From Euprymna scolopes (lineage: Eukaryota), in assembly GCA_053919585.1 (NCBI GenBank), contig CM132800.1: a DNA stretch of 64,000 nucleotides; one strand, written 5' to 3'. Shown here one piece after another: positions 10,064 through 61,959 of this stretch (position 1 is its first letter; each line of letters opens with the position of its first letter). Both the position numbers and the translations under genes were made by a program. The notes under the pieces were generated by a model. That model was not told the DNA's origin. It worked only from the letters and a program-made list of their open reading frames with translations, and did no database searches.

Positions 10064-13000
10064 GAGAGTAGAAAACGCATTGTGGATGCGTTATCGGCAG
10101 CTCCTGTTACTCTCGCTTCTTCTTATTTGTCCCTCAGTCCTCATTTTTTAATGAGTGATTTTTCTGACAAAGGGAGAAGAAAAAGCTGTTTTCTAGGTTG
10201 GCAGTATTTTGTGCGAACAGTTGGCAGAGATGGCGGAAATTTTCTGTTTCTATGTCTATCCTTGTAGCCATGTCACTAGTAAGGGTGCTGGAGGTAAACG
10301 TTTTGTCTGGGCTGACGTTATCCGCCTGATAGTCAGGGACCCGAACCTTGGATTAACCACCAAGGAGGCTGTCCTATCAGCAGGTGCAAAGTACTGGGGC
10401 TGCTATATTGCCATTTGGTGAATGGATTCTGGACCATGCAGTAGCTTCTGGTGGGGCCTCTCGATGCCATACTAGTGGGTAATTGTTACGGCTTTACCTT
10501 ATCATTAGCTACAAATAATAAAAAAAATTCTTCGTTTCTTTTTCTCTCTTAATTTCCCCTCTCTGTCCTGCTCTAAGTAAATCTGACGACCTAGTCCACA
10601 AATTTCAAAATTTCATCATGACAAGTTTCAAGAAAAAATACACGATTAAACCCGGTTCTCCAACTTCCAACGTAGACCCCTACTACCATGTCTCCTTCTC
10701 CAACATCAGGGGTCGACGTTCTAACCTTCCAGAGGTTGACACCCAATTACAGGAGACTAAACCAGACCTTTTATTTTTAAGTGAAACTGGCATTGGACAG
10801 GCTATTTCCCTAGAAGAGTTTGCAATTAAAGGATACTCTAACTTAACTTCTAAATCTGACCCCCAAATCGCCATGGGCATGGAATATGTGCCTATATTAA
10901 AAATAGCTTTCCATGTGGTAGGGACATCTCCAGGGAAGATTCTAACTTACCCTATATGTGCTTCCGGGTTGCTTTAGCTCACACTACGGCATTTTTATTT
11001 ACTCTCTATCCCCCACAAAGCGGAGTTACTATCTTTTAAAGCATATCTGAGAAAGTTGACCAAGTTCTATCTGCTTATCCTTCAGCTAACATTTACGTAT
11101 GTGGAGACTTCAATGTTCACAACGTCGAATGGTTGACCCACTCAAACAAGACCGATGATGAGGGGAGGTTCTGTGATGATTTCTCCATTGCCTATGACCT
11201 CACTCAGATTGTTCAGGAACCCACCCGTGTGCCCGACAATGACGGCCAGTATGCGAGCCTACTAGACCTTTTTCTCACAACTTGCCCTGAACTATGTTCA
11301 GTTTCTGTTCTGTCGCCTCTTGGATCTTCCGACCACTCTGTTGTATCAATTAAGATAAAAATGAAATGCAATACGTCCCCAGACGTACCTCTCCATCGTA
11401 CAGTATATCGATACACTAAGGCTGACTGGGATAGCTTCCGTACATTTATAACTGATCTACCTCTGCATTCCATATTTTAAAAGGATGTGTCCTCTATAGT
11501 ATTAGACCTTACGGAATGGTTAATTGTAGGTATTGATCGTTTCATACCCTCGAAAAAGTTTCAGCAAAAACCTAACAGCCAGCCATAGTTCTCTCCAGAA
11601 TGTGCTGCTGCCATTGCGCACAGAAATCACTTTTTCCACTGTTTCCAACGTAATAGATGTATGGAAACTAAAGCCGCTTTCAGGACGGCCAGCAAACACT
11701 GTAAGCAAGTAATAAAGAGCTCAAGATGGTTGTATGCTCAATCTGTTAAGTCCAAAGTAGCTGAACAGCGGCTTGGTTCCCACCAGTTTTGGCAAATAGC
11801 AAACAGAATTCTGAACAGAAGCGTGTGCTCAATCCCAACTATCATCAATGGACCTGAGGTAATCTCGTCAGCATCAGACAAAGCCAAACTCTTTGTCAAG
11901 AACTTTGCAGCTAATTCTACCTTTTGCGATCAAGGCCGCTAACCCCCAATATTTCCTCCTGTATCTGAAAACACACTATGTGATATACGGATATCTGTAC
12001 GTGATGTTGCCAAGCTAAGCAAAAACCTTGATTCCAGTAAAGCAACTGGCCCGGACGGTATTCCAATTATAGTACTCAAAAAACTTCAACCTGAACTAGC
12101 GCCCATACTTACAAAACTATTTAAACGTTGTCTTAAGGAGAATAGTTTCCCATCTCCCTGGAAAATTTCATCAGTATGCCCTGTATTTAAGAATTCAGGT
12201 GATCGCTCATCCCCCTCTCAGTACAGGCCAATAAGTCTCCTGTGCGTCATGAGTAAGTTGCTGGAATTTGTGTTAAATACAGAAGTAATCAACCATCTCA
12301 ACAAAAATAACCTTCTTAGTGAAACTCAATATGGTTTCCGTTCTGCTAGATCTACAGCAGATGTGCTTACAGTTATATCTCATAGGATTAGCAAATCGCT
12401 CGACGGAGGCAACCTTTCCAGGGCAATTGCTCTTGACATATCTAAGGCCTTTGATAGGGTTTGGCATAAAGGTTTACTTCATAAGATCTCTAGCTATGGT
12501 ATAGCTGGAAATGTCTTCTCAATTATTAAACCATTTCTTTCTGATAGGTTCATAAGAGTAGTAGTTGAGGGGCAAAAATCAGAAGCCCACAGTATTAATG
12601 CCGGTGTCCCGCAGGGGTCCATCCTGGGCCCAACTCTTTTTCTGATCTACATTAATGATCTTCCAAATCACATCCTTACATCAGTTGTAGACATTTATGC
12701 TGACGACACTACCATTTATAGTAGCACATCTAAGACAGTAAACGACCAAGTTCTCTCCAATTCTCTCTCCTCTGATCTTGAGCATGTAGTACAATGGGGA
12801 AAGGAGTGGCTGGTTACTTTTTATGCATCTAAAACCAAGCTTCTCTCTTTACGTCATCAACATTCTGATCCCCATCTAGCATCAATTGAAATGAATGGCT
12901 CTCGTCTTCAGGAGGCCTCAAGTTTTGACAAGCTTCTGGGCTTGACCATTACTCCTGATCTGAAATGGAACACGTACATCAAATCTGTTGCTAAGGCCGC

Positions 13001-13655
13001 TGGAAAAATGGTGGGATCTTTCTATCGATCCAGTAGATATCTCACTGCTGATACAATTCTCTATTTATATAAGAGCCAGGCACGTCCAAGGATGGAATAC
13101 TGTTGCCACATCTGGGCAGGAGCTGCTAAAGGACTTGTCCTGCCTTGATAGAGTTCAAAATAGACTTCGTAGCCTCGTAGGAGATGTCCTTTTCTCTTCC
13201 TTGCAACCTCTATCTCACAGAAGAGATGTTGCGAGTTTGTCTCTGATGTATCGTTATTTTTATGGAAAGTGTTCGACTGAGCTTCAATCTATGGCCCCCC
13301 TTGCAAAACTTTCACAAGAAACACTCGTCTAGCTGTAAACACTATCAATAATTCCCCCCACTCTTTATCTGTGCCTAAACCTAAACGTAGATTCCATGAA
13401 CAAAGCTTTTTTATTAGAACTGCACGCCTGTGGAATTGTCTTCCGTTTTCCTGGTTTCCGGCTGACTACAATATGGTTGTCTTCAAGTCTAACGTAAATA
13501 AGTTCTTGATGAGTCGTTCCATATAAGTTATCAAATTTAACAAATTTTTATTACTAATGATTATGATATGTTCCAATTTCTACTGTACACTCTTTAACCC
13601 TTATCATTGAGTGGCCTCTTGGCCTTGATAATGAGTTGATACCTATGAAAAAAAA
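10064..13655 (+). mobile_element. Near full-length CR1-group non-LTR retrotransposon (LINE A): structured leader, EN-RT ORF, 3' stem-loop, A-tail
   Basis: APE endonuclease motifs (SNIRG, LSET, GDFN, LLDLFL, SDHS) and RT motifs (QYGFR, ALDISKAFDRVWH, GVPQGSILGP, IYADD, MEYCCHIW). A-tail at 13648-13655. The 5' boundary is inferred from the start of structured, GC-richer sequence. Confidence 0.92.
10618..13526 (+). pseudogene. Disrupted APE endonuclease-reverse transcriptase ORF of LINE A
   Basis: Collinear ORF fragments 10618-10977, 11133-11480, 11661-11942, 12249-13148 and 12988-13332, separated by stops and frameshifts. Confidence 0.93.
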
Positions 13656-31479: not shown

Positions 31480-34400
31480 GGCATGGTGGACGCGGGCGTT
31501 TGTTGCGGTCACTCTTCGTTGGAGCTCTCAGAAGAGGCGTCGGAACCATTGGCATCAGCGTTAGGGCGTCCAGTCATACCATCAGACTGAACTTCTTCAT
31601 CTTCATCGGAGCTCTCAGAAGGGGTGCTGGAACTATCGTCGGCAGCGTCAGGGTTCGCAGTTGTATCATCACGGGGAATAGGTCGGATGCACAGATGATC
31701 GTTGGATTATTCACCATTACTGCTACTCGCCAACTGGTTCATATTTACGGCATGCCGGATATCCTTCACATGGCGTGGGGTACCATCGACTAGCACGGTT
31801 TGCTTACTGATGATATCAGTTATTCGCCCTCTTTGAACGCTGTTGGTTCATCGATTATTGGGAGGCTTCACCCAGACACTGTCCCCTAACTCATACGGCC
31901 CTCGGGTTTCCTGCCAATCAGGCACACGGGCGTCTGTGTCCTTGATGCGCACTCGATAGCAATGGACCGCCTTGTTGGGTGCGCTTGCAGCAGTCATGCC
32001 ATCCTTTAGTGTTGCATTATATCTCTTGACCGCTTCTGCCATCGTGCATTGTTTTCTTGCCGCGATCCTCTTCACGCTTCGATTGCACCGCTCTGCTATG
32101 CCATTGCTACTCGACACACGTGCACATCTGTATCTGAGCTGGATCACCCACTTGTCTACGAAACGTCTGGAATCCCCACTGCAGAAGGCCGTGTCTTTGT
32201 CTGTGAGGATCTCTTCAGGTGGGCCCTTTAATAAAATATGGACTCCAATTCACAGATGACAATGGAGGAATCCTGTCTTATAAACGGGCGCCAGATCGCG
32301 AACCTTGTCGGTCCACAATCGATCAGAGTGAGGAAGTACTGGTTGCTGTAGTCAATTATGCCCATACCTGGACTATACTGAAAAAAAAATGGTCGGGTCC
32401 TTCTATCGATCCAGTAGATATCTCACTGCTGATGCAATTCTCTATCTATATAAGAGCTAGATACGTCCAAGGATGGAATACTGTTGCCACATATGGGCAG
32501 GAGCTGCTAGAAAAGACTTGTCCTGTCTTGATAGGGTTCAAAATAGACTTCGTGGCCTGGTGGGAGATGTCCTTTTCTCTTCTCTGCAACCTCTATCTCA
32601 CATAAGATATATTGCGAGTTTGTCTCTGCTTTATCGTTATTTTCATGGAAAGTGTTCGACTGAGCTTCAATCTATGCCCCCCTCGCCAAACTTTCACAAG
32701 AAAACCTCGTCTAGCTGAAAACACAATCAATAATTCCCCCCACTCTTTATCTGTGCCTAAACCTAAACATAGATTCCATGATCAAAGCTTATTTCTTAGA
32801 ACCGCACGACTGTGGAATTGTATTCCGTTTTCCTGCTTTCCAGCCATCTATAATATGGTTGTAATCAAGTCCAGCGTGAACAAGTTTCTGGTGAGCCGTT
32901 CCACTTAAATTAACAAATTTACCGAACTTCCATTACTATCGATTACTACATTGTCCTTTTGACTACTGTACACTCTTTAACCCTTATCCTTGAGTGGCCT
33001 ATCGGCCTTGATAAGTGGTGACGCCTATGTAAAAAAAAAACTAGTCGGCTCCAAGTCGTGTCTACTCTCAGCTGACCTTTCCGCCATCTGGCCGGGTTGG
33101 GGTCAATTGACTTGCATGTTTGTCAATCCTTGAATACCGCATTCACTACACATTTGGACACCGACGGATTGGACAACTGCACAAAATAACATGCCCATCT
33201 CACTTCGGGGTGTCCACTGAGGTAGTTTATCTTCCGGATTTCATCCTCCAACTCAATAGAGGCGGCACATAATGGCACTAGCTCGGTGTTCTTCATGGTG
33301 TCATCCCATCTCTGTGACACCCGAGTGAGCCTATACGCAAGGTTGCAATTTGAAGTGACCACTACCGCATCCGCAGACAGTTTGTAGTCTGTTACTTACC
33401 TTTTTACGGTCTCTGAGTTCCTTCTGATGAGCATCTCGCTGGCTGGCATAGTGCGCACGCTGGTCTTGCCTATTCGTGTATATGCTATCCAGTAGTACAC
33501 ACATGAATCCGTGTGTATCCGTAATATCCTGACTTTCCACTGCAGTGCCAGGTTGACACCTTTTATCACAGCATCGAGCTCTGCCAGGTTGATATGAGCA
33601 GCATCATTCACCGGTCGCAACAAGCAGGCGTCCTCAATCGCAGCCTCATACTTTTTCAACAGCATACCAATTGCCAGAGAGCTCGCATCCACCCACACGT
33701 TCAGTTTGTCTCCCTGCACGCACCAGTCTTCTTTGGCGGCGTCATCCTGCTTTAGCCTTGCGATGGTCTCCTTCACTATGCAAACCAACAGATCGTCGGC
33801 TGTTTCATCATCCCAGACTTTGGTGACTGCGCCTCACCTCCTTTTTATGATGCCTGTTGCAACACGATTTAATCCACACACTGGTAGGTGCCCCACAAGT
33901 TTTCCAAACAGGGAGAATACTGTTCGCCTCGTGAAGACATCGGGCACTGCAGGAACTGCAGTTCCGCGCCTCCCTTTCAAAATCCCTCCCTCCTGTCGAA
34001 CTTCAAAATCAAGACACGGACGCCATTCTCCAAACGGTCTGGGTCCTTGGACGTCAAACCGAACTCATCCAGTTTGGACCTTACACGTGATAATGACACA
34101 GTGTCTTCGTTCACATATATGTCATCAAGGTACGCCGATGTCTTATCTTTTATTGTTTCTTCCTGTGACAACACAGCGTTAATGATGGTCTTCATTATTT
34201 GGGGTGCGACGTTCAGCCCGAACCCTAGTCTAATACGGCAGTACCTCCTGCAAGCAAACATCACCGTCTGAAATTGCCATATTGTTTCCCTGATTCGGAC
34301 CTGCAGGTATGCTTTTCTTAGATTCAGCAGGGACACATTGCAACCCTGCTGGCGCCACTCTCGTAGCTTGCTGGAACAAATGCCAGCATCTGCCCTGATT

Positions 34401-35057
34401 GCATCAACATGCGCGTTCAGTTCACGGTAGACCATCACTGGCCTCACCTTTGCTTTGTTGTGCTGAGCAACCGCCATCAGCGGAATCAGGCCTCTAGGAG
34501 GTACAAGTTTCTCATAGGGGTAGGGAAATAACCAGCCATCCTTGATCCAATCACGAAGTTCCTCTTCGTATGCAGGACCCATTTGGTCGGGCACATGGTA
34601 CTCTGTTACCTCATTTCGCAGTTTGGCTGGTCTCTGGTTTTCCGACCACTTCCACGTGGCTGTCCAAGCCTTCTGCTGCTGGTCAAATTCGACAATAAAG
34701 TCTAAAGATTGATCAGCCAGACTGGGGCTTTCTTCTGAAACTGTACCGCCCCGTCTGCGTGAGCACCACCAAGAGCTCTGAGAGCATCATAGCCTAGAAG
34801 CAGGTCAAAGCTCAGCGGTTTCTCGAGTACTACCAGCGCTTGGACATTAGCTGAATTGCATGTTCTAGTGGGAATGTTCACAGCGCCCACCCCGCAACAT
34901 GTCCGCGTCGCTCCACTGAGGGTGGTTACTCTAGTAGTCTTCCTCGTCCACGTGCGGCAGAGATCCGCTCTCACTATGGTACGAGACAACCCCGAGTTGA
35001 AGAGAGCTGAGCACAATGTCTCATTGATTTAGACCTGAATGGACGGAAGCGCATCAT
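31480..35057 (-). pseudogene. pol: Gypsy pol (PR-RT-RH-IN), disrupted and interrupted by a LINE fragment
   Basis: ORF pieces 35016-34702 (protease, catalytic D mutated: ALFNSG), 34594-33977 (RT), 33788-33396 (RNase H), 33362-33123 (HHCC region) and 32147-31848 (integrase). Confidence 0.92.
32370..33040 (+). mobile_element. 5'-truncated LINE A-family copy nested in the Gypsy integrase
   Basis: Closely matches ~13000-13650 (MEYCCHIWAGA..., 3' motif, A10 tail). Removing it restores the integrase reading W-S-R-L-G-M. A 2-bp CT is repeated at the junctions. Confidence 0.95.
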
Positions 35058-55007: not shown

Positions 55008-56574
55008 AAAATAAAAAATTGTATTTGGATTCATCAGATTACTGTTGTAATCTTTCGGTTGATGTAATCACTCCACCCCTCCTCCAAATATGGTTAGCCA
55101 TGTTACTGGAAGTGCTATGATACTAACTTTGTTATTTCTTCTCTTTTAAACTTCTTATTTCATTTTGTAATTTGTAATTATGTGTATTTTAATAATTTAT
55201 ATATGCATTTGTCTTTTTGTTTTCTTTGTTTAGTTTCAAATCCCCCCATCAAAACATCAACCACGTTCTCTTTCAGCTTAACTGATTAATTCTACGCTCT
55301 GTACTAAGGCGAGAGATAAAATACCTTAGGCAGGATAAATTTTCCGAAATTAGGACAAATGTGGATTTATTTTTTTCCTACCGTAGAAGCCAGAAGAACT
55401 TTATTTAAGTAATATACTTAATATCTACAATTGCCATATTCTTGCTGTATTAATAAAGAGGGATCGTTGATATCTCTACCAAACCTCTTGATATAGCTTA
55501 TAATTAACTGTTACTATACTTGTAACTGAAATCTACAGTGATCTTAGCTGCGTCACTAGGTTTTTTTTTCTGAATAGATACACTGTTTTGTCCTCAAACC
55601 TTTATGACTGCTAATAAATATGAATTCCGAATCACGACGAAATAATTGTTTCTCTTTACCTCCAAGACGACTGCCTATGTCTAACCTGCATGCAAAATAG
55701 GGGAAAAGAAGGGAAAATTTTATTTGTTTCTTCCAAGCTAAAACAATACTGTAAACTCTAAATCCTAATGAAACTTTACTGCATTCTGTAAGTTAATAAC
55801 CCCGACCCTTGAAATCTAACAATCTGCTCCCCCCTCTAGCTGTCACTAAAATCCTACATTACATATGCCTTAGTAGTAGAATCCTTAGCCTCCAGCTCCT
55901 AACTTTCACATGCTAACCGCCTAACAGTCATCACTAAACAGCTATACATTTCTACCTCTGACATGCATTAGGGTTCATTCCTATCCAGTTTGGTACTTAC
56001 CAGCCAAAATATGCTCTCGGATGCAAAGCGATCTTCATTACATAACAATGCCTCTTCCTCTTTTTGCAACAAACAATACTAAACCAAATCCGATACTCCC
56101 TGTTATGCAAAACGCTCGATGACTCTTAAAGGAAAACTTAATTTCTATTCCTTCAATAGTAGAAACACTAACACAACTTCTATCTATTTGCATCTACTAA
56201 AAACTTGCCCAAATATCTATTTACTTAATTATACATAGGAATACGCCATGACTTAAAATGTACCTCTAGTGATACCCTTACGGTACTGCACCTACATCTT
56301 TACCCTCCTAAATCTTAATATACAGTGACTGAGCAAAATTCTTAGCTAAATTCCTAATACATATTCACACTATAACGTTATCCTGTACCTAAACTAGCAT
56401 AAAGTTAAAAAAAATGGTAAAATCTAAAGGTAAAATTCTTAATCCGCACTAACGCCTTTTTAACAAGCCTGCTCATATAACTGCTTCCACTGCATGTCCC
56501 TAAATCACTTTGAGGAGTGTAACTATTCATTAGATATATAACCTCTACAAACAAACTCTGTAACATTAACTAAC

Positions 56575-59500
56575 CACGCGGGGTCGCAGAAATACCTAGA
56601 TTAGGACCCAGGCGCGGGGCAAACCCTCTCAGGGCTGATGGGACCAGTAGATCTTCCCAGATCCCCCATCTTGGAGAAGGAAAACGCTGAAACTAAACCA
56701 AAAGGGAGGGAGGCCTCTCCAGTCTTGGATGACAACCTTCCTAGAGCTGGTGACTCAATCAAATTACCGGCCTGCAAACCTAAATTGCTTAAGGAGTAGA
56801 TAGGCTCTGTCTATTGCCTGACTTCCATACTCCTTCTTTGCCTATTAGTCAGGCGCAGAGACACTATCACAGTGATTCGACAAAACACTTAGTGGTAGAT
56901 CTTGTTTCTTGTCTAGGGCAATGAATGCCGTTTCTTCACTCCCGACATATCGCACACCTTAAAACTGGGCATTTGGGAGTGCTTGAGTACCACACATGCC
57001 TGTGCAATTAGATTGGGGTGACCTTCTTCTGATTGGCTGAGGGTACCGTATTGACAGTTCATAACTGCTGTCTCCGACTGGTAGTACAATAGCCCTAACT
57101 CTTTGGAAGCGCTTAGAGCGGCTGCTCCATCAACAGTTGTATAATATCGGCATGTTTGTAATGCCATGTCGCGCATGGAAAGGGAGCCTGCACTCATCCC
57201 CGATGGGTTTTCCTGAGGCCATAGTCCTAGTTGAAGAAAGGTCAGCTAATGGGCTACTTGTGTTGCATGTCTGATACCCTGCATGACCTCTTGTTCAGCT
57301 CCCCCTTACCTAACTAAAACTCTTTAAAAACATGACAGTACAATAAAAAATAAGCTCATACCAGGCCTAGGGACAAACAAATCCAACTTGCCTCCTCCCT
57401 TGAGGCTTGCATTCACAAACATCCGTGGACGTAGAACTAATTAAGCTGATGTTGAAGCATTTCTCCTAACAAATACCCCGGATATCTTAGCACTATGCGA
57501 GACTAACCTACACTCCTCCATCCCCTCTAAAATGCCTGACTATCTCCCACTCTGCCGTAAGGACTCTGACAGACATATACACGGACTTTGAGTTTACATT
57601 CGTAACACCCTCCTCCTGATTAGAGAAAAAACCTAGAAACAGACGATCAAGCCTTATGTGATTTAGACTATACATACACCATAACATTAGCTACTTTTAT
57701 TTTCTCTACCGCTCTCCCTCTACCGAGGACTGCACTATAATAAACAAAGTCTCTGACGGCATAGACACATCACTCTTCCTCAACAATAGCGCACAAGTAC
57801 AGTATTTGGTGACTTTAATGTTCACCACAAAAAGTGGCTTGGATTCTCTACTCACACAGATGTAGCAGACAGCTCAACACATAGCTTTGCTATATCTCAC
57901 TCCCAATCACAAATGGTTACGTTTCCAACTCGTTTCCCTGACCAGCAAGAACAACTCGCATCACTTCTAGATCTGTTTCTGACATCGGTTCCCGAGGATG
58001 GTATAACAAATGCTTACATCTCACTCGGGAACGCTGACAATGCAGTGATAATGGTAGAAATCGCCCTAAATTCTAGACTCAAAACTGAAGAGCCATCACT
58101 CAAAACAACGAAATATTATACAAAGGCTGACTGGGAAAACATCATAGATCTTCATGGGGAAATCGTTTTTCTCTTCCTGCTGAACAGTGCGCAAATGAGA
58201 CCACTGAATTGTTCAAAACAGCAATTGAAGCACATGTTCCCATGCGGAAATTTTATAGCAAGCCCCACTCTCCCCAATGATTTACTTCTACTTGCGCAAC
58301 TGCCATTGCTCAAAGGCAGCATGCATACCACAAATTTAACCGACATAAGTCCAGTTCAAACAGACAGAAGTATATAGAAGTCAGAAGTTACGTTAAGAAA
58401 GAAATAGCAACAGCTAAGAGAGAATTTACTGAAACCACTAAAAACGCATCGAAACACAAAAATTAGGAACTTGTGACTTCTGGAAAATCTACGACGGTGT
58501 AGTAAATAATGGGCAATCAACAATTCCCCCCTAACGAACAATCACTAGGTTGTTTGTTCAGCAACCGACAAGGCTAATATGCTTACCAGCCGGTTTGCCT
58601 CAAACTCCCTACTGGACCCTTCCAACCACCCCTGCCTGACTTTCCTTTGCGGACAGACGGCACGCTAGACGATCTAAAAATCACCCCTTCTCAGGTGCAT
58701 GCTATCATAAAAAAACCTTGACACTTCAAAAGCATGTGGACCTGATCTCATCCCAGCTGTGCTATTAAAAAAGTGCTCAGCCGAAGTAGCTCCAGTTCTC
58801 TCCAAACTCTACAACAAAATGCCTTAATGAACCATGCTTTCCGGGCTTTTTAAAACTGCTGCTGTGGTACCAGTATTCAAGAATTCTGGCGAAAGAACTG
58901 ACCCATCAAATTATCGCCCCATTTGCCTCCTCCCGCCAAAATATTTTAGACCATAATGAACCATGCTCTAGTCCGTCACCTTACAGATGCTAAACTTCTG
59001 ACTGACAAAAAATATGGATTTAGACAAGCCCGTTCAACAGCAGACATCCTCACTGTAATCTCTGAACATATATACCATTCACTGGACAAAGCGGGAGAGG
59101 GCCGAGCGGTAGATCGAGATATATCTAAGGCTTTTGACAGGGTATGGCGTGAGGGTCTCCTCAGTAAAATTAGATCATACGGTATCACTGGTAAAATACT
59201 TAACATAATTAAATCCTTGTTAGATAAGAGAAAAATCCAGGTTGCCCTCGACGGTCGTACATCTAAACAATATGATATAAATGCGGGAGTGCCTCAGGTG
59301 TCTATCCTTTGACCTCTATTGTTCCTAATATTTATAAATGATATCCCTGTCAAAACTGCCTGAGATTGGTATATATGCTGATGACACCAGACTCTATATC
59401 AGACATGACAGGAAAAAAATAAACACATAACGAAAGAAATGACAAAAACACTAGAGGATGACCTCCAGTCTGTAGTGGAATGGAGACAAACATGGATGGT

Positions 59501-60290
59501 CACATCCAATGCTGCCAAGACTAAACTGGTTTCCTTCAATAATTACAAGAAACCTTATTTGTCACCAATAGCAATGGCCAGTGACTTTCTATCTGAGAGT
59601 ACATCTTTCAAACTGTTTGGCCTAACGTTCGCAGGAAACATGAGTTGGAACAATTATATTGAAAACATTGCCAGGGCCGCTGCGAAGAAGGTAGGCTTCT
59701 CTCTACCGTGCTAGAAAACTACTGACACCTCAAAGTATCATTTACCTCTATAAGGCCACAATTCGCCCATGTATGGAGTATTGCTGTCCCATTTGGGCTG
59801 GTGCACCTGCTACTAGTCTCTCGCTCCTAGACAAGGTTCAAAAGAAAGTCGCCAATCTGCTAGGCCCTGAACTGGCATCTAATCTTCAGCCTCTGCCCCA
59901 TCAGCGAAACGTTGCATCCCTCTGCCTTTTCTACAAGCATTTTAATGGTGAATGCTCTGTCGAACTGCAGACACTAGTGCCCCCACGACGTAGACACTCC
60001 CAACAAACCCGACAGGCAAATCCCACCCCCATGCAGTAGAGATCCCTAGATGTAAAAGATCTTTCTACTCCAGTAGTTTCTTCCCCAGAACCGCTAGACT
60101 CTGGAATTCCATCCCAGATCCCTGCTTCCCCAACTGTACTGACATGCAGAAGTTCAAGTGTAACGTGAAAAGACATCTTGCTCTCCAAATCCTAACGTAA
60201 TGCCCCAGTAGTTGCTGCCCCTGATAGTAGCCCCTACACCAAAGTGGCAATGTGCCTTGTTTGGGGTAAAAATTAAAAAAAAAATAAAAA
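56575..60290 (+). mobile_element. Near full-length CR1-group LINE (LINE B, a different family from LINE A) with a ~750-nt structured leader
   Basis: FTNIRG, LALCET, GDFNVHH, LLDLFL, KYGFRQARST, DISKAFDRVW, GVPQ, IYADD, MEYCCPIW. 3' stem-loop at 60231-60266, then an A-rich tail. Confidence 0.92.
57332..60200 (+). pseudogene. Disrupted EN-RT ORF of LINE B
   Basis: Fragments 57913-58377, 58956-59312, 59439-59714 and 59773-60039, plus intervening motifs. Confidence 0.9.
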
Positions 60291-61959
60291 GAAAATACTG
60301 GAAGAATTGTACAAAGCGAGCAAGCGAGCGAGAGATAGAGAGAGTAAATAAATGTCTGATGTTTTTCGTCAGAATAGTCATGTTCCATCAGCAATGTTCT
60401 GTTTTTGCAAGTGTAAGAGCTAGAGAGAGAGCGAGAGAGAGAAATAAAGAGTGAGGGTGATAGACACACAGAAAGAATTGAGAAGTGAATATACAGAAAG
60501 AGGTAGGTATGCAAAGAGATTATATATTAACTTACACCGTATATTGTGAAAAATAACCTCCCCAAAAACGATCAAGGTTTCGCCACAATAGACCTGCATG
60601 CGTGTTTGTTAGTGTCTGCCTTTTTGCGCAATTAACTATTTTTTAATTGTGCACGTTTGTTCCAGTAATTAAGAGTACCTGTATATAAGCGGCTGTGTAT
60701 GAGCGGTTAGTATGTATGTACATGTTTATTCTGTTAGCATTGATGTCTTCTGTAGAAAGCGACGCCATTTTGGTATGTTTTTAAAGTGTTCGTTTATATA
60801 TGCAGTATAATCATTTTGGAATATAAGAATGTCAAGACTGAACCAATGAGATTACGCGGAATCTGGCTAAGGAGACGTTATTATTTATGAGTTTGAGAAG
60901 CGAAAGCTAATGCTATGTCTATGTGTTTATAATCAAATTACGAAGGGTGGAACTTTTTATCTATTGAAAGTGCAACATTCTTCCCGATGCTTACTGCGGG
61001 CAGTAGTAGGACTTCATATTTTGAGAGAAAAGGAAGAACTACTTCTAAAGATCGTTGCGATTGTGGTGCTGCTCCTTGGATGTAAACAAAGGGTTTTATT
61101 ATAATGACTAAATGCGTCTGAAATCTCGTTCGAAAGTTACATATAGTAGTGGCTAATAGTCTAGACAAAATATGTTTGTATGTGGCATTCATTGTTGCAA
61201 AGTCATGGTAATTTTGTCGAGAAAGGATTTGTTTCAATCAAAATATTATATATGGGATTATATATATTATGTACATATGTATATGTATTATTTATGTATA
61301 TATATTACCAAATATATTGAGGGAGTATATATTTATGAATTTTAAAAGGTGATATAATGACGAAGGAATACATAAAAAAACTAAGAGACATTAGTTAAAC
61401 AAACGTAGCATAAGCACAGAGCACTACGGCGTACAACCAAAAGGAAAAACAAATGTTGATTATATATTGTTAAAAGAACATACACGTTTATGGAAATGCA
61501 TCGATAAAAGGAATTGCGTCACTTTATGTAATTAGCTAACGAGAAGCGGATATGATTTTTACAAGCACGGAAGATATCTAATGACCTTCATCCTGAAAAC
61601 AAAGCAAGGTTGTAGTTAGAAAGAAAAACAATAAACAATAAACTTGCAGTCATTGAAAATAAACTGCTATAATAAGAAGCTGTATTAAAGTGACTATGAA
61701 AATAGCGAATTCGCGCCAACATATCAAGCTAGCTTGAACAAAAGAAATAAAAAATAAATTACACAATTCTGTTGAGCACAGCTCCGTATTGTACCCGTAT
61801 AAATACTGAGACTAGCAATACTATGTCTTTTAGAGGGAGATTGCAATAAAGAAGAAACAGAAAAAATGCAACAAATATGTTTCTGCTATTTATCAAGAAA
61901 ATACAACTGAAATTCGTATTTACCGGTGAAAATGACAACAGTACTCCATTCATGGTCCG

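What the first reader, a model, noticed from the sequence alone, without database searches (positions are those of the whole stretch)
56575..57331. ~750-nt densely structured RNA with a candidate pseudoknot directly upstream of the LINE B EN-RT ORF
Seen: a GC-enriched stretch with no plus-strand ORF, built from successive helices: gggtc/gaccc, gatggg/cccatc enclosing gatct/agatc, ccag.tct..gga/tcc.aga.ctgg, cactccc/gggagtg, caattaga/tctgattg, gacag/ctgtc, and tccat/atgga enclosing ggcat/atgcc. At 56791-56860 the hairpin gcctgact (56816-23) / agtcaggc (56847-54) sits on ctctg/cagag. Its loop carries tactcctt (56828-35), complementary to upstream aaggagta (56791-98), and gcctat (56840-45), complementary to ataggc (56800-05). 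These crossing pairings imply a pseudoknot or a two-state switch. Known: R2/RTE-type LINE leaders carry HDV-like ribozymes that process transcripts and aid translation, but the helix order here does not fit HDV or hammerhead topology. Inference: an undescribed cis-acting RNA (IRES-like ORF2 translation element, new ribozyme or RNP scaffold). From memory, cnidarian CR1-type elements have similar motifs; this is unverified.
Basis: partly seen in the sequence, partly recalled or inferred. Interest (0 to 1): 0.8.

Follow-up and report, generated by a model that had tools for sequence, protein, structure and literature searches.

The report
Conserved folded RNA in LINE leader

Summary
Window 56575-57331 lies inside the 5' leader (56494-57331) of a ~3.8-kb ORF1-less EN-RT LINE (56494-60273), as two other copies at 83-88% identity show. 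Comparison does show structure. A ~195-nt core (57034-57227), about 100 nt upstream of the start codon, recurs in nine LINE lineages whose ORF2 proteins are about 50% identical or less. These include Hydra vulgaris, a second LINE in this window (10265-10488) and metagenome contigs. It folds as a four-way junction: 52 pairs, 32 with compensatory changes, 95% of cells paired against 78% shuffled, and 58 G.U against 5 A.C cells, which places the fold on the sense RNA. There is no Rfam match and no conserved ORF on either strand. At the proposed pseudoknot (56791-56860) only one helix holds. The "loop" segments pair downstream (56835-53 with 56908-24) in every lineage, including one that lacks the upstream partners. 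Function is inferred, not shown: a cis-acting element of the LINE transcript, most likely translational (IRES-like) or an RNP scaffold. It appears to be an undescribed RNA family.

The parts
56494..60273 (+). Full-length copy of an ORF1-less EN-RT LINE ('LINE B'), decayed by frameshifts and stop codons
   Evidence: blastn aligns window 56494/56561-60273 with L002 (88%) and L001 (83%) end to end. Pfam finds Exo_endo_phos_2 and RVT_1 on the ORF pieces. The 5' ends of the three copies coincide at ATGTCC....
56494..57331 (+).
   Evidence: The leader is conserved in L001 and L002, with 83% mean column identity. No frame on the plus strand is open for more than 69 codons. It holds 13 upstream ATGs, which equals the random expectation of 13.0.
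56637..56670 (+).
   Evidence: These helices are in the RNAalifold consensus of winB, L001, L002, L003 and L005, with changes on both sides at 5 of 11 pairs. Only three lineages contribute, so the support is moderate.
56792..56834 (+).
   Evidence: Helix A has one compensatory pair and the local hairpin has three, all from Hydra L005. It is in the MFE of the window, L002 and L005.
56835..56924 (+). Long helix H: 56835-53 pairs with 56908-24 (and 56858-62 with 56899-903).
   Evidence: Four compensatory pairs in the 56835-53/56908-24 stem, from L003 and L005, and three more in the 56858-62/56899-903 extension. CM R2 finds helix H in L004, which lacks the upstream partners. It is in the single-sequence MFE of all five lineages.
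57034..57227 (+). Conserved core RNA domain, a four-way junction; the CM match is 57023-57240
   Evidence: nhmmer and CM hits in L001-L007, L009, L015 and window 10265-10488. There are 52 pairs, 32 of them compensatory, with 0 of 500 shuffles reaching the observed value on all five measures.
57034..57050 (+). Closing stem of the core, 5' strand; it pairs with 57211-57227
   Evidence: 13 pairs, 8 with changes on both sides, 95.7% of cells paired.
57053..57072 (+).
   Evidence: A hairpin forms at this position in all 8 lineages, each with a different stem sequence.
57075..57139 (+). Arm 1: stacked helices 57075-80/57134-39, 57089-95/57120-28 and 57099-102/57115-18
   Evidence: 9 of 17 pairs are compensatory. 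For example, CUCU/AGAG becomes CCUUGG/CCAAGG in the window's other LINE and CCUCU/GGAGG in L015.
57145..57205 (+). Arm 2: helices 57145-61/57188-205 capped by the hairpin 57164-69/57173-78
   Evidence: 15 of 21 pairs are compensatory. The cap CCAUG/CAUGG becomes CCAAG/CUUGG (L004), CCAUU/AAUGG (second window LINE) and CCGG/CCGG (L015).
57241..57331 (+). Spacer between the core and the start codon; it contains a short uORF at 57267-57317
   Evidence: The spacer is 91-130 nt in six lineages (with the L003 start re-read by eye). The uORF is present in the three family copies.
57332..60200 (+). Remnant of the single EN-RT ORF (start ATG at 57332, stop at 60198-60200)
   Evidence: Open pieces and their frames; Pfam domains; homologous intact or near-intact ORFs in L001-L003.
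60201..60297 (+). 3' UTR (to 60273) and a short A-rich tail (60268-60297)
   Evidence: Homology with L001 and L002 ends at 60273. The tail is seen.
56916..57245 (-). Antisense open frame of 110 codons, judged fortuitous
   Evidence: Homologs P0156-8 exist, but they shift frame relative to one another. Every frame on both strands has stop codons across the core in L003, L004, L005 and the window's other LINE.
10265..10488 (+). Second instance of the core domain, in the leader of the window's other LINE ('LINE A', ORF ATG at 10618)
   Evidence: nhmmer E = 2.7e-15. The CM gives 168 bits, but this sequence was in the training set.

Best explanation
Shown here: 56575-57331 is most of the 5' UTR of an ORF1-less LINE with an apurinic-type endonuclease and a reverse transcriptase. 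The sense transcript of this leader carries RNA structure that evolution preserves. The main element is a ~195-nt four-way junction (57034-57227) about 100 nt upstream of the start codon. It is shared by LINE lineages whose ORF2 proteins are about 50% identical or less, in this genome, in Hydra vulgaris and in environmental contigs. A second domain upstream (56792-56924) is nested and is shared by fewer lineages. Inferred, not shown: the core acts in cis on the LINE mRNA/template. The most likely role is to promote initiation at the single ORF from a long leader that is full of upstream AUGs, by IRES-like internal recruitment or shunting, so that the full-length RNA can serve both as messenger and as template for reverse transcription. 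I put about 0.9 on the claim that this is a selected, structured, sense-strand cis-RNA, and about 0.35-0.4 on the translational mechanism in particular.
For: Element boundaries and family membership of the leader. Cross-lineage recurrence of the core: nhmmer E-values from 1e-14 to 1e-68; CM R1 finds the sequences it was not trained on, L009 (67 bits), L007 (51 bits) and L006 (63 bits). Covariation: 28 of 52 pairs are compensatory on a sequence-only MAFFT alignment. On 11 sequences, 95.0% of cells are paired against 78.0% when shuffled and 38-44% when slid, 32 pairs are compensatory against 15.9, and 0 of 500 shuffles reach the observed value on all measures. The held-out sequences keep 37/38 and 43/47 pairs at only 54% and 48% identity, with 15 and 16 compensatory pairs. 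Strand: 58 G.U cells against 5 A.C cells. Not coding: stop codons in all six frames in four lineages. For a role in translation: the spacer to the AUG is 91-130 nt in six lineages; there are 10-16 upstream ATGs per leader, at the random expectation and so not depleted; and there is no ORF1.
Against: There is no experimental evidence and no RNA data. The core is absent or undetectable in some relatives (L008, L011, L017, L086, L087). In L007, L009 and L015 the distance to the ORF looks longer or cannot be fixed. Upstream AUGs inside the spacer argue against simple scanning from the core. A fixed position near the 5' end of the ORF is equally compatible with binding of the nascent ORF2 protein. 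The A5 alignment was fitted to the model, which inflates the pairing counts somewhat. The effective number of independent lineages is about nine.
Confidence: 0.5

Rival explanations
1. RNP scaffold. The core, or the whole leader, is the cis binding site for the element's own ORF2 protein or for a host chaperone. It would stand in for the missing ORF1 protein in cis-preference, packaging or second-strand steps, as the 5' protein-binding RNA of R2 does.
For: The element has no ORF1. The core sits next to the start of the ORF, where nascent protein emerges. Conserved unpaired motifs at the junctions (GUAGU, AAC, AUCA) are invariant across lineages, as protein contacts would be.
Against: LINEs of the CR1 group are generally held to be recognised by their RT through the 3' stem-loop (general knowledge; also stated in PMC6740152). 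No binding data exist. Some relatives lack the core.
Confidence: 0.25
2. Nuclear export or stability element for an intronless transcript, comparable in role to retroviral CTE or IAP RTE elements.
For: It is a sense-strand structured domain of about 200 nt with several stem-loops in an unspliced retroelement RNA.
Against: There is no sequence or Rfam similarity to known export elements. The fairly constant distance to the AUG is not expected for an export element.
Confidence: 0.1
3. One reading: crossing helices at 56791-56860 form a pseudoknot or a two-state switch.
For: All four complementary pairs exist. Hydra L005 keeps B-B' and C-C' complementarity through changes on both sides: 5 of 26 pairs are compensatory, a value that 15 of 500 shuffles reach. 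The upstream and downstream partners resemble each other, so alternative pairing is possible in principle.
Against: The nested model scores better on the same sequences: 94.7% against 85.9% paired, and 11 of 34 against 5 of 26 compensatory pairs. It is the MFE in all five lineages, including this copy. L003 breaks B-B' at two pairs. All copies except the window have a C.A mismatch inside C-C'. L004 keeps the 'loop' segments paired downstream although A, B and C are deleted.
Confidence: 0.12
4. Self-cleaving ribozyme that processes read-through transcripts, as HDV-like or twister ribozymes do in other LINEs.
For: There is precedent in R2, RTE and L1Tc elements (PMC3383444) and in Schistosoma LINEs (PMC8501958). 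The domain is a compact conserved fold with invariant junction nucleotides.
Against: There is no Rfam ribozyme match at E <= 10 in this window or at E <= 5 in four other lineages. The core lies about 540 nt inside the element, so cleavage there would remove a conserved leader from the template. The supported topology is a nested four-way junction, not a double pseudoknot.
Confidence: 0.04
5. Conservation reflects DNA-level function only (an internal promoter), or an antisense protein-coding ORF comparable to L1 ORF0.
For: LINE 5' UTRs carry internal promoters (general knowledge). Antisense frames of 139-160 codons are open in family copies and were called as genes.
Against: Compensatory changes and the 58:5 ratio of G.U to A.C cells point to a sense-strand RNA. 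The antisense frames differ between copies and are closed in other lineages. A promoter may still coexist with the RNA structure.
Confidence: 0.05

Closest known systems
5' RNA of R2 elements (a conserved pseudoknot / 5' protein-binding motif, and an HDV-like ribozyme at the 5' end)
   Same: Both are conserved, covariation-supported RNA structures in the 5' region of a single-ORF non-LTR retrotransposon transcript, and both act in cis.
   Different: R2 uses a restriction-like endonuclease and inserts at a specific rDNA site. Its ribozyme is a double pseudoknot at the extreme 5' end. Here the fold is a nested four-way junction about 540 nt inside the leader of an APE-type LINE, and it matches no HDV-family model. 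The comparison with the R2 pseudoknot rests on my own knowledge of the literature and was not aligned here.
Viral IRES domains (HCV/pestivirus domain III junctions; picornavirus type I/II)
   Same: Both are multi-helix junction domains in a long 5' UTR rich in upstream AUGs, placed at a roughly fixed distance upstream of the initiation codon.
   Different: No Rfam IRES family matches. Activity is untested. The 91-130 nt spacer with upstream AUGs differs from IRESs of the HCV or CrPV type, which place the AUG directly.
ORF1-less LINEs of the CR1 group (Zenon, Rex1, L2 clade B)
   Same: A single APE+RT ORF, no ORF1, a short A-rich tail and the C-terminal motif typical of CR1-group ORF2. Zenon is reported from insects, crustaceans, molluscs and hydra (PMC13343379).
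   Different: The papers I could read describe no conserved structured domain in the 5' UTR of these elements (PMC13343379, PMC6740152). Chicken CR1 subfamilies are reported to differ in their 5' UTRs (a title cited in PMC6740152). Here, by contrast, the leader core is the one non-coding part that is recognisable across lineages.
L1Tc Pr77/L1TcRz and twister-variant ribozymes of Schistosoma LINEs
   Same: Both are functional RNA or DNA modules in the 5' end of APE-type LINEs.
   Different: Those modules sit in the first ~77-100 nt and self-cleave. Nothing here suggests cleavage, and the position is internal.

Membership tests
HDV-like self-cleaving ribozymes | Match to the covariance models of the family, which encode a nested double pseudoknot (P1, P1.1, P2, P3, P4) | tested here: not met
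   No Rfam 15 hit at E <= 10 in window 55500-58500, nor at E <= 5 in L003, L004, L007 and L015. The covariation-supported fold is a nested four-way junction.
HDV-like self-cleaving ribozymes | Position at the extreme 5' end of the element, so that cleavage leaves the whole element intact | tested here: not met
   The core starts about 540 nt downstream of the family's 5' end at 56494.
HDV-like self-cleaving ribozymes | Site-specific self-cleavage | not testable with these tools
   This needs a transcription and cleavage assay.
Hammerhead, twister and other small ribozymes | Match to the Rfam models and their conserved catalytic cores | tested here: not met
   Searches give no match. No CUGANGA...GAAA core is arranged around three helices (read).
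Known IRES families (Rfam) | Match in sequence and structure to a described IRES model | tested here: not met
   none.
IRES (functional class) | Cap-independent internal initiation in a controlled reporter | not testable with these tools
   Only circumstantial evidence is available: a long leader with 10-16 upstream ATGs, and a 91-130 nt spacer.
Conserved structured RNA (general criterion) | Statistically supported covariation in several independent lineages | tested here: met
   32 of 52 pairs are compensatory and 0 of 500 shuffles reach the observed value on all five measures. Slid controls give 11-19 compensatory pairs and 38-44% of cells paired. Held-out sequences keep 91-100% of pairs.
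Conserved structured RNA (general criterion) | Thermodynamic stability beyond shuffled sequence | tested here: not met
The single-sequence MFE of the window's core contains 0 of the 52 consensus pairs. The signal is comparative, not energetic.
LINE ORF1 or antisense ORF0-like coding region | An open frame conserved across lineages | tested here: not met
   There are stop codons in all six frames across the core in L003, L004, L005 and the second window LINE. Family copies shift frame relative to one another. Pfam finds nothing.
CR1-group ORF1-less LINE (Zenon-like) | A single ORF with APE endonuclease and RT, and no ORF1 | tested here: met
   Pfam Exo_endo_phos_2 and RVT_1. There is one gene call per element and no leader ORF.
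CR1-group ORF1-less LINE (Zenon-like) | Poly-A tail | tested here: inconclusive
   The window has an A-rich run of about 30 nt and L003 has A12, but L001 and L002 end in GAAAAT followed by unrelated sequence.
CR1-group ORF1-less LINE (Zenon-like) | Phylogenetic placement of the RT within the clade | not tested
   No reference RT set (Repbase/Dfam) was available. The nearest named proteins are automatic NCBI names from Hydra vulgaris.

The most novel reading that the evidence does not exclude
The four-way-junction core is a new class of retrotransposon RNA module. In this reading it lets ORF1-less LINEs dispense with ORF1 protein, either by recruiting ribosomes internally or by nucleating the ORF2 RNP on its own template.
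Probability: 0.3. Interest if true: 0.8.

Novelty: new variant of a known kind. Interest (0 to 1): 0.6.

Why it matters
It is poorly understood how single-ORF LINEs translate their protein from long leaders full of upstream AUGs, and how they achieve cis-preference without ORF1 protein. This finding offers a defined RNA domain of about 195 nt, supported by covariation, at a nearly fixed distance from the start codon. It is shared by LINEs whose coding DNA is otherwise barely alignable, which makes the domain a concrete object for reporter, probing and binding experiments. It would also be a candidate new RNA family for Rfam, and a marker for annotating full-length copies of these abundant invertebrate LINEs. 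In addition, the antisense 'proteins' from this leader that sit in public databases (P0156-P0158) are best read as gene-calling artefacts.

Tried and rejected
Looking for other copies inside the window by blastn found none for the leader. An exact 28-mer from the invariant block was not found in the JGI metagenome contigs. The representative-library search with the 195-aa EN piece returned only distant relatives at 33-63% identity, and these did not lead to leaders. Five of twelve contig look-ups returned no DNA.

No core was found in L086 (a Hydra element named 'jockey' by NCBI), L087, L008, L011 or L017. L087 gave only a marginal R2 hit of 17.5 bits.

I rejected the antisense-ORF idea and a plus-strand ORF1 remnant, since stop codons occur there at the random rate. 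By-eye resemblances of the core to 7SL/Alu, 5S rRNA and tRNA promoter boxes were not backed by Rfam and I dropped them.

The source organism could not be established. The last protein search gave no named close relatives, and the window holds only transposable-element ORFs. Searches of the earlier findings by place and by sequence were blank.
Full report
WHAT IS AT THE COORDINATES

The interval 56575-57331 has G+C of 0.46, against flanks of 0.25-0.37. It lies directly upstream of a decayed endonuclease/reverse-transcriptase ORF. Pfam finds Exo_endo_phos_2 and RVT_1 on the open pieces. No plus-strand frame stays open for more than 69 codons.

IS IT MORE THAN CHANCE IN THIS SEQUENCE? NO.

- The 757-nt stretch folds with z = -1.29 on the plus strand and +1.23 on the minus strand, relative to dinucleotide shuffles.
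- The 81-nt pseudoknot site has z = -1.34.
- Inverted repeats of 5, 6, 7 and 8 nt within 60 nt number 50, 13, 5 and 2, against 45, 12, 3.0 and 0.7 in shuffles.
- In a sliding 120-nt scan only 56760-56879 reaches z = -2.7, and a window inside ORF2 does too.
- The low absolute energies reflect a balanced G/C content next to G-poor flanks.
- Rfam 15 gives no match at E <= 10.

WHAT THE STRETCH BELONGS TO

A minus-strand open frame of 110 codons (56916-57245) served as bait. It has three database 'proteins' at 62-85% identity. Each of them lies divergently next to EN-RT genes. The two contigs with available DNA, L001 and L002, align with the window from 56494/56561 to 60273 at 83% and 88%.

The element is therefore a ~3.8-kb single-ORF LINE with these parts:
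- an 838-nt leader (56494-57331);
- a start codon at 57332;
- a stop codon at 60198-60200;
- a 3' UTR of about 75 nt and a short A-rich tail.

The antisense frame is not a gene. The three 'proteins' change frame relative to one another. In four other lineages every frame on both strands across the homologous core contains stop codons.

THE MAIN RESULT: A CONSERVED CORE

ORF2 of this family is only about 50% identical in protein to its nearest relatives, among them Hydra vulgaris. Even so, a block of the leader is recognisable in those relatives: L003, L004 and Hydra L005, and also upstream of the second LINE in this window at 10283-10471 (nhmmer E from 1e-15 to 1e-57). A scan of JGI metagenome contigs with an ORF2 alignment added L015, L006, L009 and L007.

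Between L002 and L015, or L002 and the second window LINE, less than 90 nt of ORF2 DNA can be aligned, yet the core aligns along its whole length.

RNAalifold on a plain MAFFT alignment of eight sequences gives 52 pairs, 28 of them with compensatory changes. The fold is a four-way junction with these parts:
- a closing stem, 57034-50 with 57211-27;
- a sequence-variable hairpin, 57053-72, which forms in all eight lineages;
- arm 1, with helices 57075-80/57134-39, 57089-95/57120-28 and 57099-102/57115-18;
- arm 2, with 57145-61/57188-205 capped by the hairpin 57164-69/57173-78.

Examples of covariation:
- CCAUG/CAUGG becomes CCAAG/CUUGG, CCAUU/AAUGG or CCGG/CCGG.
- CUCU/AGAG becomes CCUUGG/CCAAGG or CCUCU/GGAGG.

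Statistics on 11 sequences:
- 95.0% of cells are paired, against 78.0 +/- 1.1% when shuffled and 38-44% when the partner is slid.
- 32 pairs carry double changes, against 15.9 +/- 2.7.
- 0 of 500 shuffles reach the observed value on all five measures.

Three sequences not used to build model R1 were found by it. They keep 37/38, 43/47 and 16/16 pairs at 54%, 48% and 72% identity to the consensus, with 15, 16 and 1 compensatory pairs.

G.U cells outnumber A.C cells by 58 to 5, so the folded strand is the LINE's sense RNA. No Rfam family matches the core in five lineages.

The comparative signal is not visible thermodynamically. The window's own MFE contains none of the 52 consensus pairs.

THE PROPOSED PSEUDOKNOT (56791-56860)

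This part of the leader is conserved in fewer lineages: the window's own family, L003, Hydra L005, and partly L004.

A nested alternative has three parts:
- a local hairpin, 56799-805 with 56809-15;
- a long helix, 56835-53 with 56908-24.

It is 94.7% paired with 11 of 34 compensatory pairs on the same sequences. It is the single-sequence MFE in the window, L002, L003, L005 and L004. In L004 the upstream partners are deleted, yet the long helix remains and covaries.

All other copies have a C.A mismatch there.

A switch cannot be excluded, because Hydra also keeps the alternative complementarity. I rate it at about 0.12.

- gatggg/cccatc enclosing gatct/agatc is in the three-lineage consensus and has double changes.
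- gacag/ctgtc is the variable hairpin of the core.
- tccat/atgga and ggcat/atgcc are replaced by better-supported pairings.
- cactccc/gggagtg and caattaga/tctgattg lie in a family-specific insert and could not be tested beyond the family.

HOW IT LIKELY WORKS (INFERENCE)

The facts that bear on function are these:
- The structure is on the sense strand.
- It sits 91-130 nt upstream of the start codon in six lineages.
- The leaders are 800-950 nt long and carry 10-16 upstream ATGs, exactly the random expectation.
- There is no ORF1.

These fit a cis-acting element of the mRNA/template. I favour a translational role by IRES-like recruitment or shunting, at about 0.35-0.4. An RNP-scaffold role for ORF2 protein comes next at about 0.25, followed by export or stability at about 0.1. 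A ribozyme is unlikely, because the position is internal, the fold is nested, and no model matches. A DNA-level promoter may coexist with the RNA structure but does not explain the compensatory changes.

COMPARISON WITH WHAT IS KNOWN

The element type fits ORF1-less LINEs of the CR1 group. Zenon elements are described as lacking ORF1, having a poly-A tail, and occurring in insects, crustaceans, molluscs and hydra (PMC13343379). Phylogenetic membership was not tested here.

Known 5' RNA modules of LINEs are the HDV-like ribozymes and Pr77 (PMC3383444), twister variants (PMC8501958), and the R2 5' pseudoknot (from my own knowledge). None matches in model, topology or position.

The papers I could search describe no structured 5' UTR domain for CR1-group elements.

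An earlier unverified note calls this genome a large mollusc. If that is so, the core spans at least two phyla.

VERDICT

Noticed in passing
window 10064-13400, core at 10265-10488, ORF ATG at 10618: The window's other LINE ('LINE A') carries the same four-way-junction core in its leader, although almost none of its ORF2 DNA aligns with LINE B. Its RT piece (12249-13148) is intact over 299 aa, and an 88%-identical relative exists in ENA (P0278).
   Followed up: partly
window 55750-56490: The ~740 nt directly upstream of the LINE's 5' end are strongly depleted in G on the plus strand (GC skew -0.29 to -0.44, G+C 0.35-0.37). This could be a different repeat or a mutationally biased sequence. It was not identified.
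   Followed up: no
window 60228-60268; same position in L001, L002 and L003: The 3' UTR ends in a conserved GCCCC...GUUUGGGG stem-loop just before the tail, and it is also kept in the divergent L003. It may be the RT recognition hairpin typical of 'stringent' LINEs.
   Followed up: no
window 57267-57317: A short uORF of 16 codons lies in the spacer between the core and the start codon. It ends 14 nt before the main ATG and is present, with variable ends, in L001 and L002. Other lineages also have short uORFs in the spacer.
   Followed up: partly
P0156, P0157, P0158 (ENA gene calls); window 56916-57245 minus strand: Public protein collections hold 139-148-aa 'proteins' translated from the antisense strand of this LINE leader. 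They shift frame between copies and look like gene-calling artefacts.
   Followed up: yes
window 33396-34594, minus strand: ORFs of 130 and 205 aa with the look of reverse transcriptase and RNase H suggest a fragment of an LTR-type retroelement. This is unrelated to the finding.
   Followed up: no
L004 301-407: A near-perfect long hairpin in the far-upstream part of the L004 contig hits several miRNA-precursor models on both strands, all below their gathering scores (best 54.5 bits against 100). It is probably an inverted repeat, not a miRNA.
   Followed up: no
L003 115-161 and 155-235: A weak second match of the d1 leader profile at L003 115-161 (E 0.58, 8.5 bits) overlaps the main match at 155-235, and nhmmer split the L003 leader match in two. 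That part of the L003 leader may carry an internal repeat of the hairpin-bearing segment.
   Followed up: no
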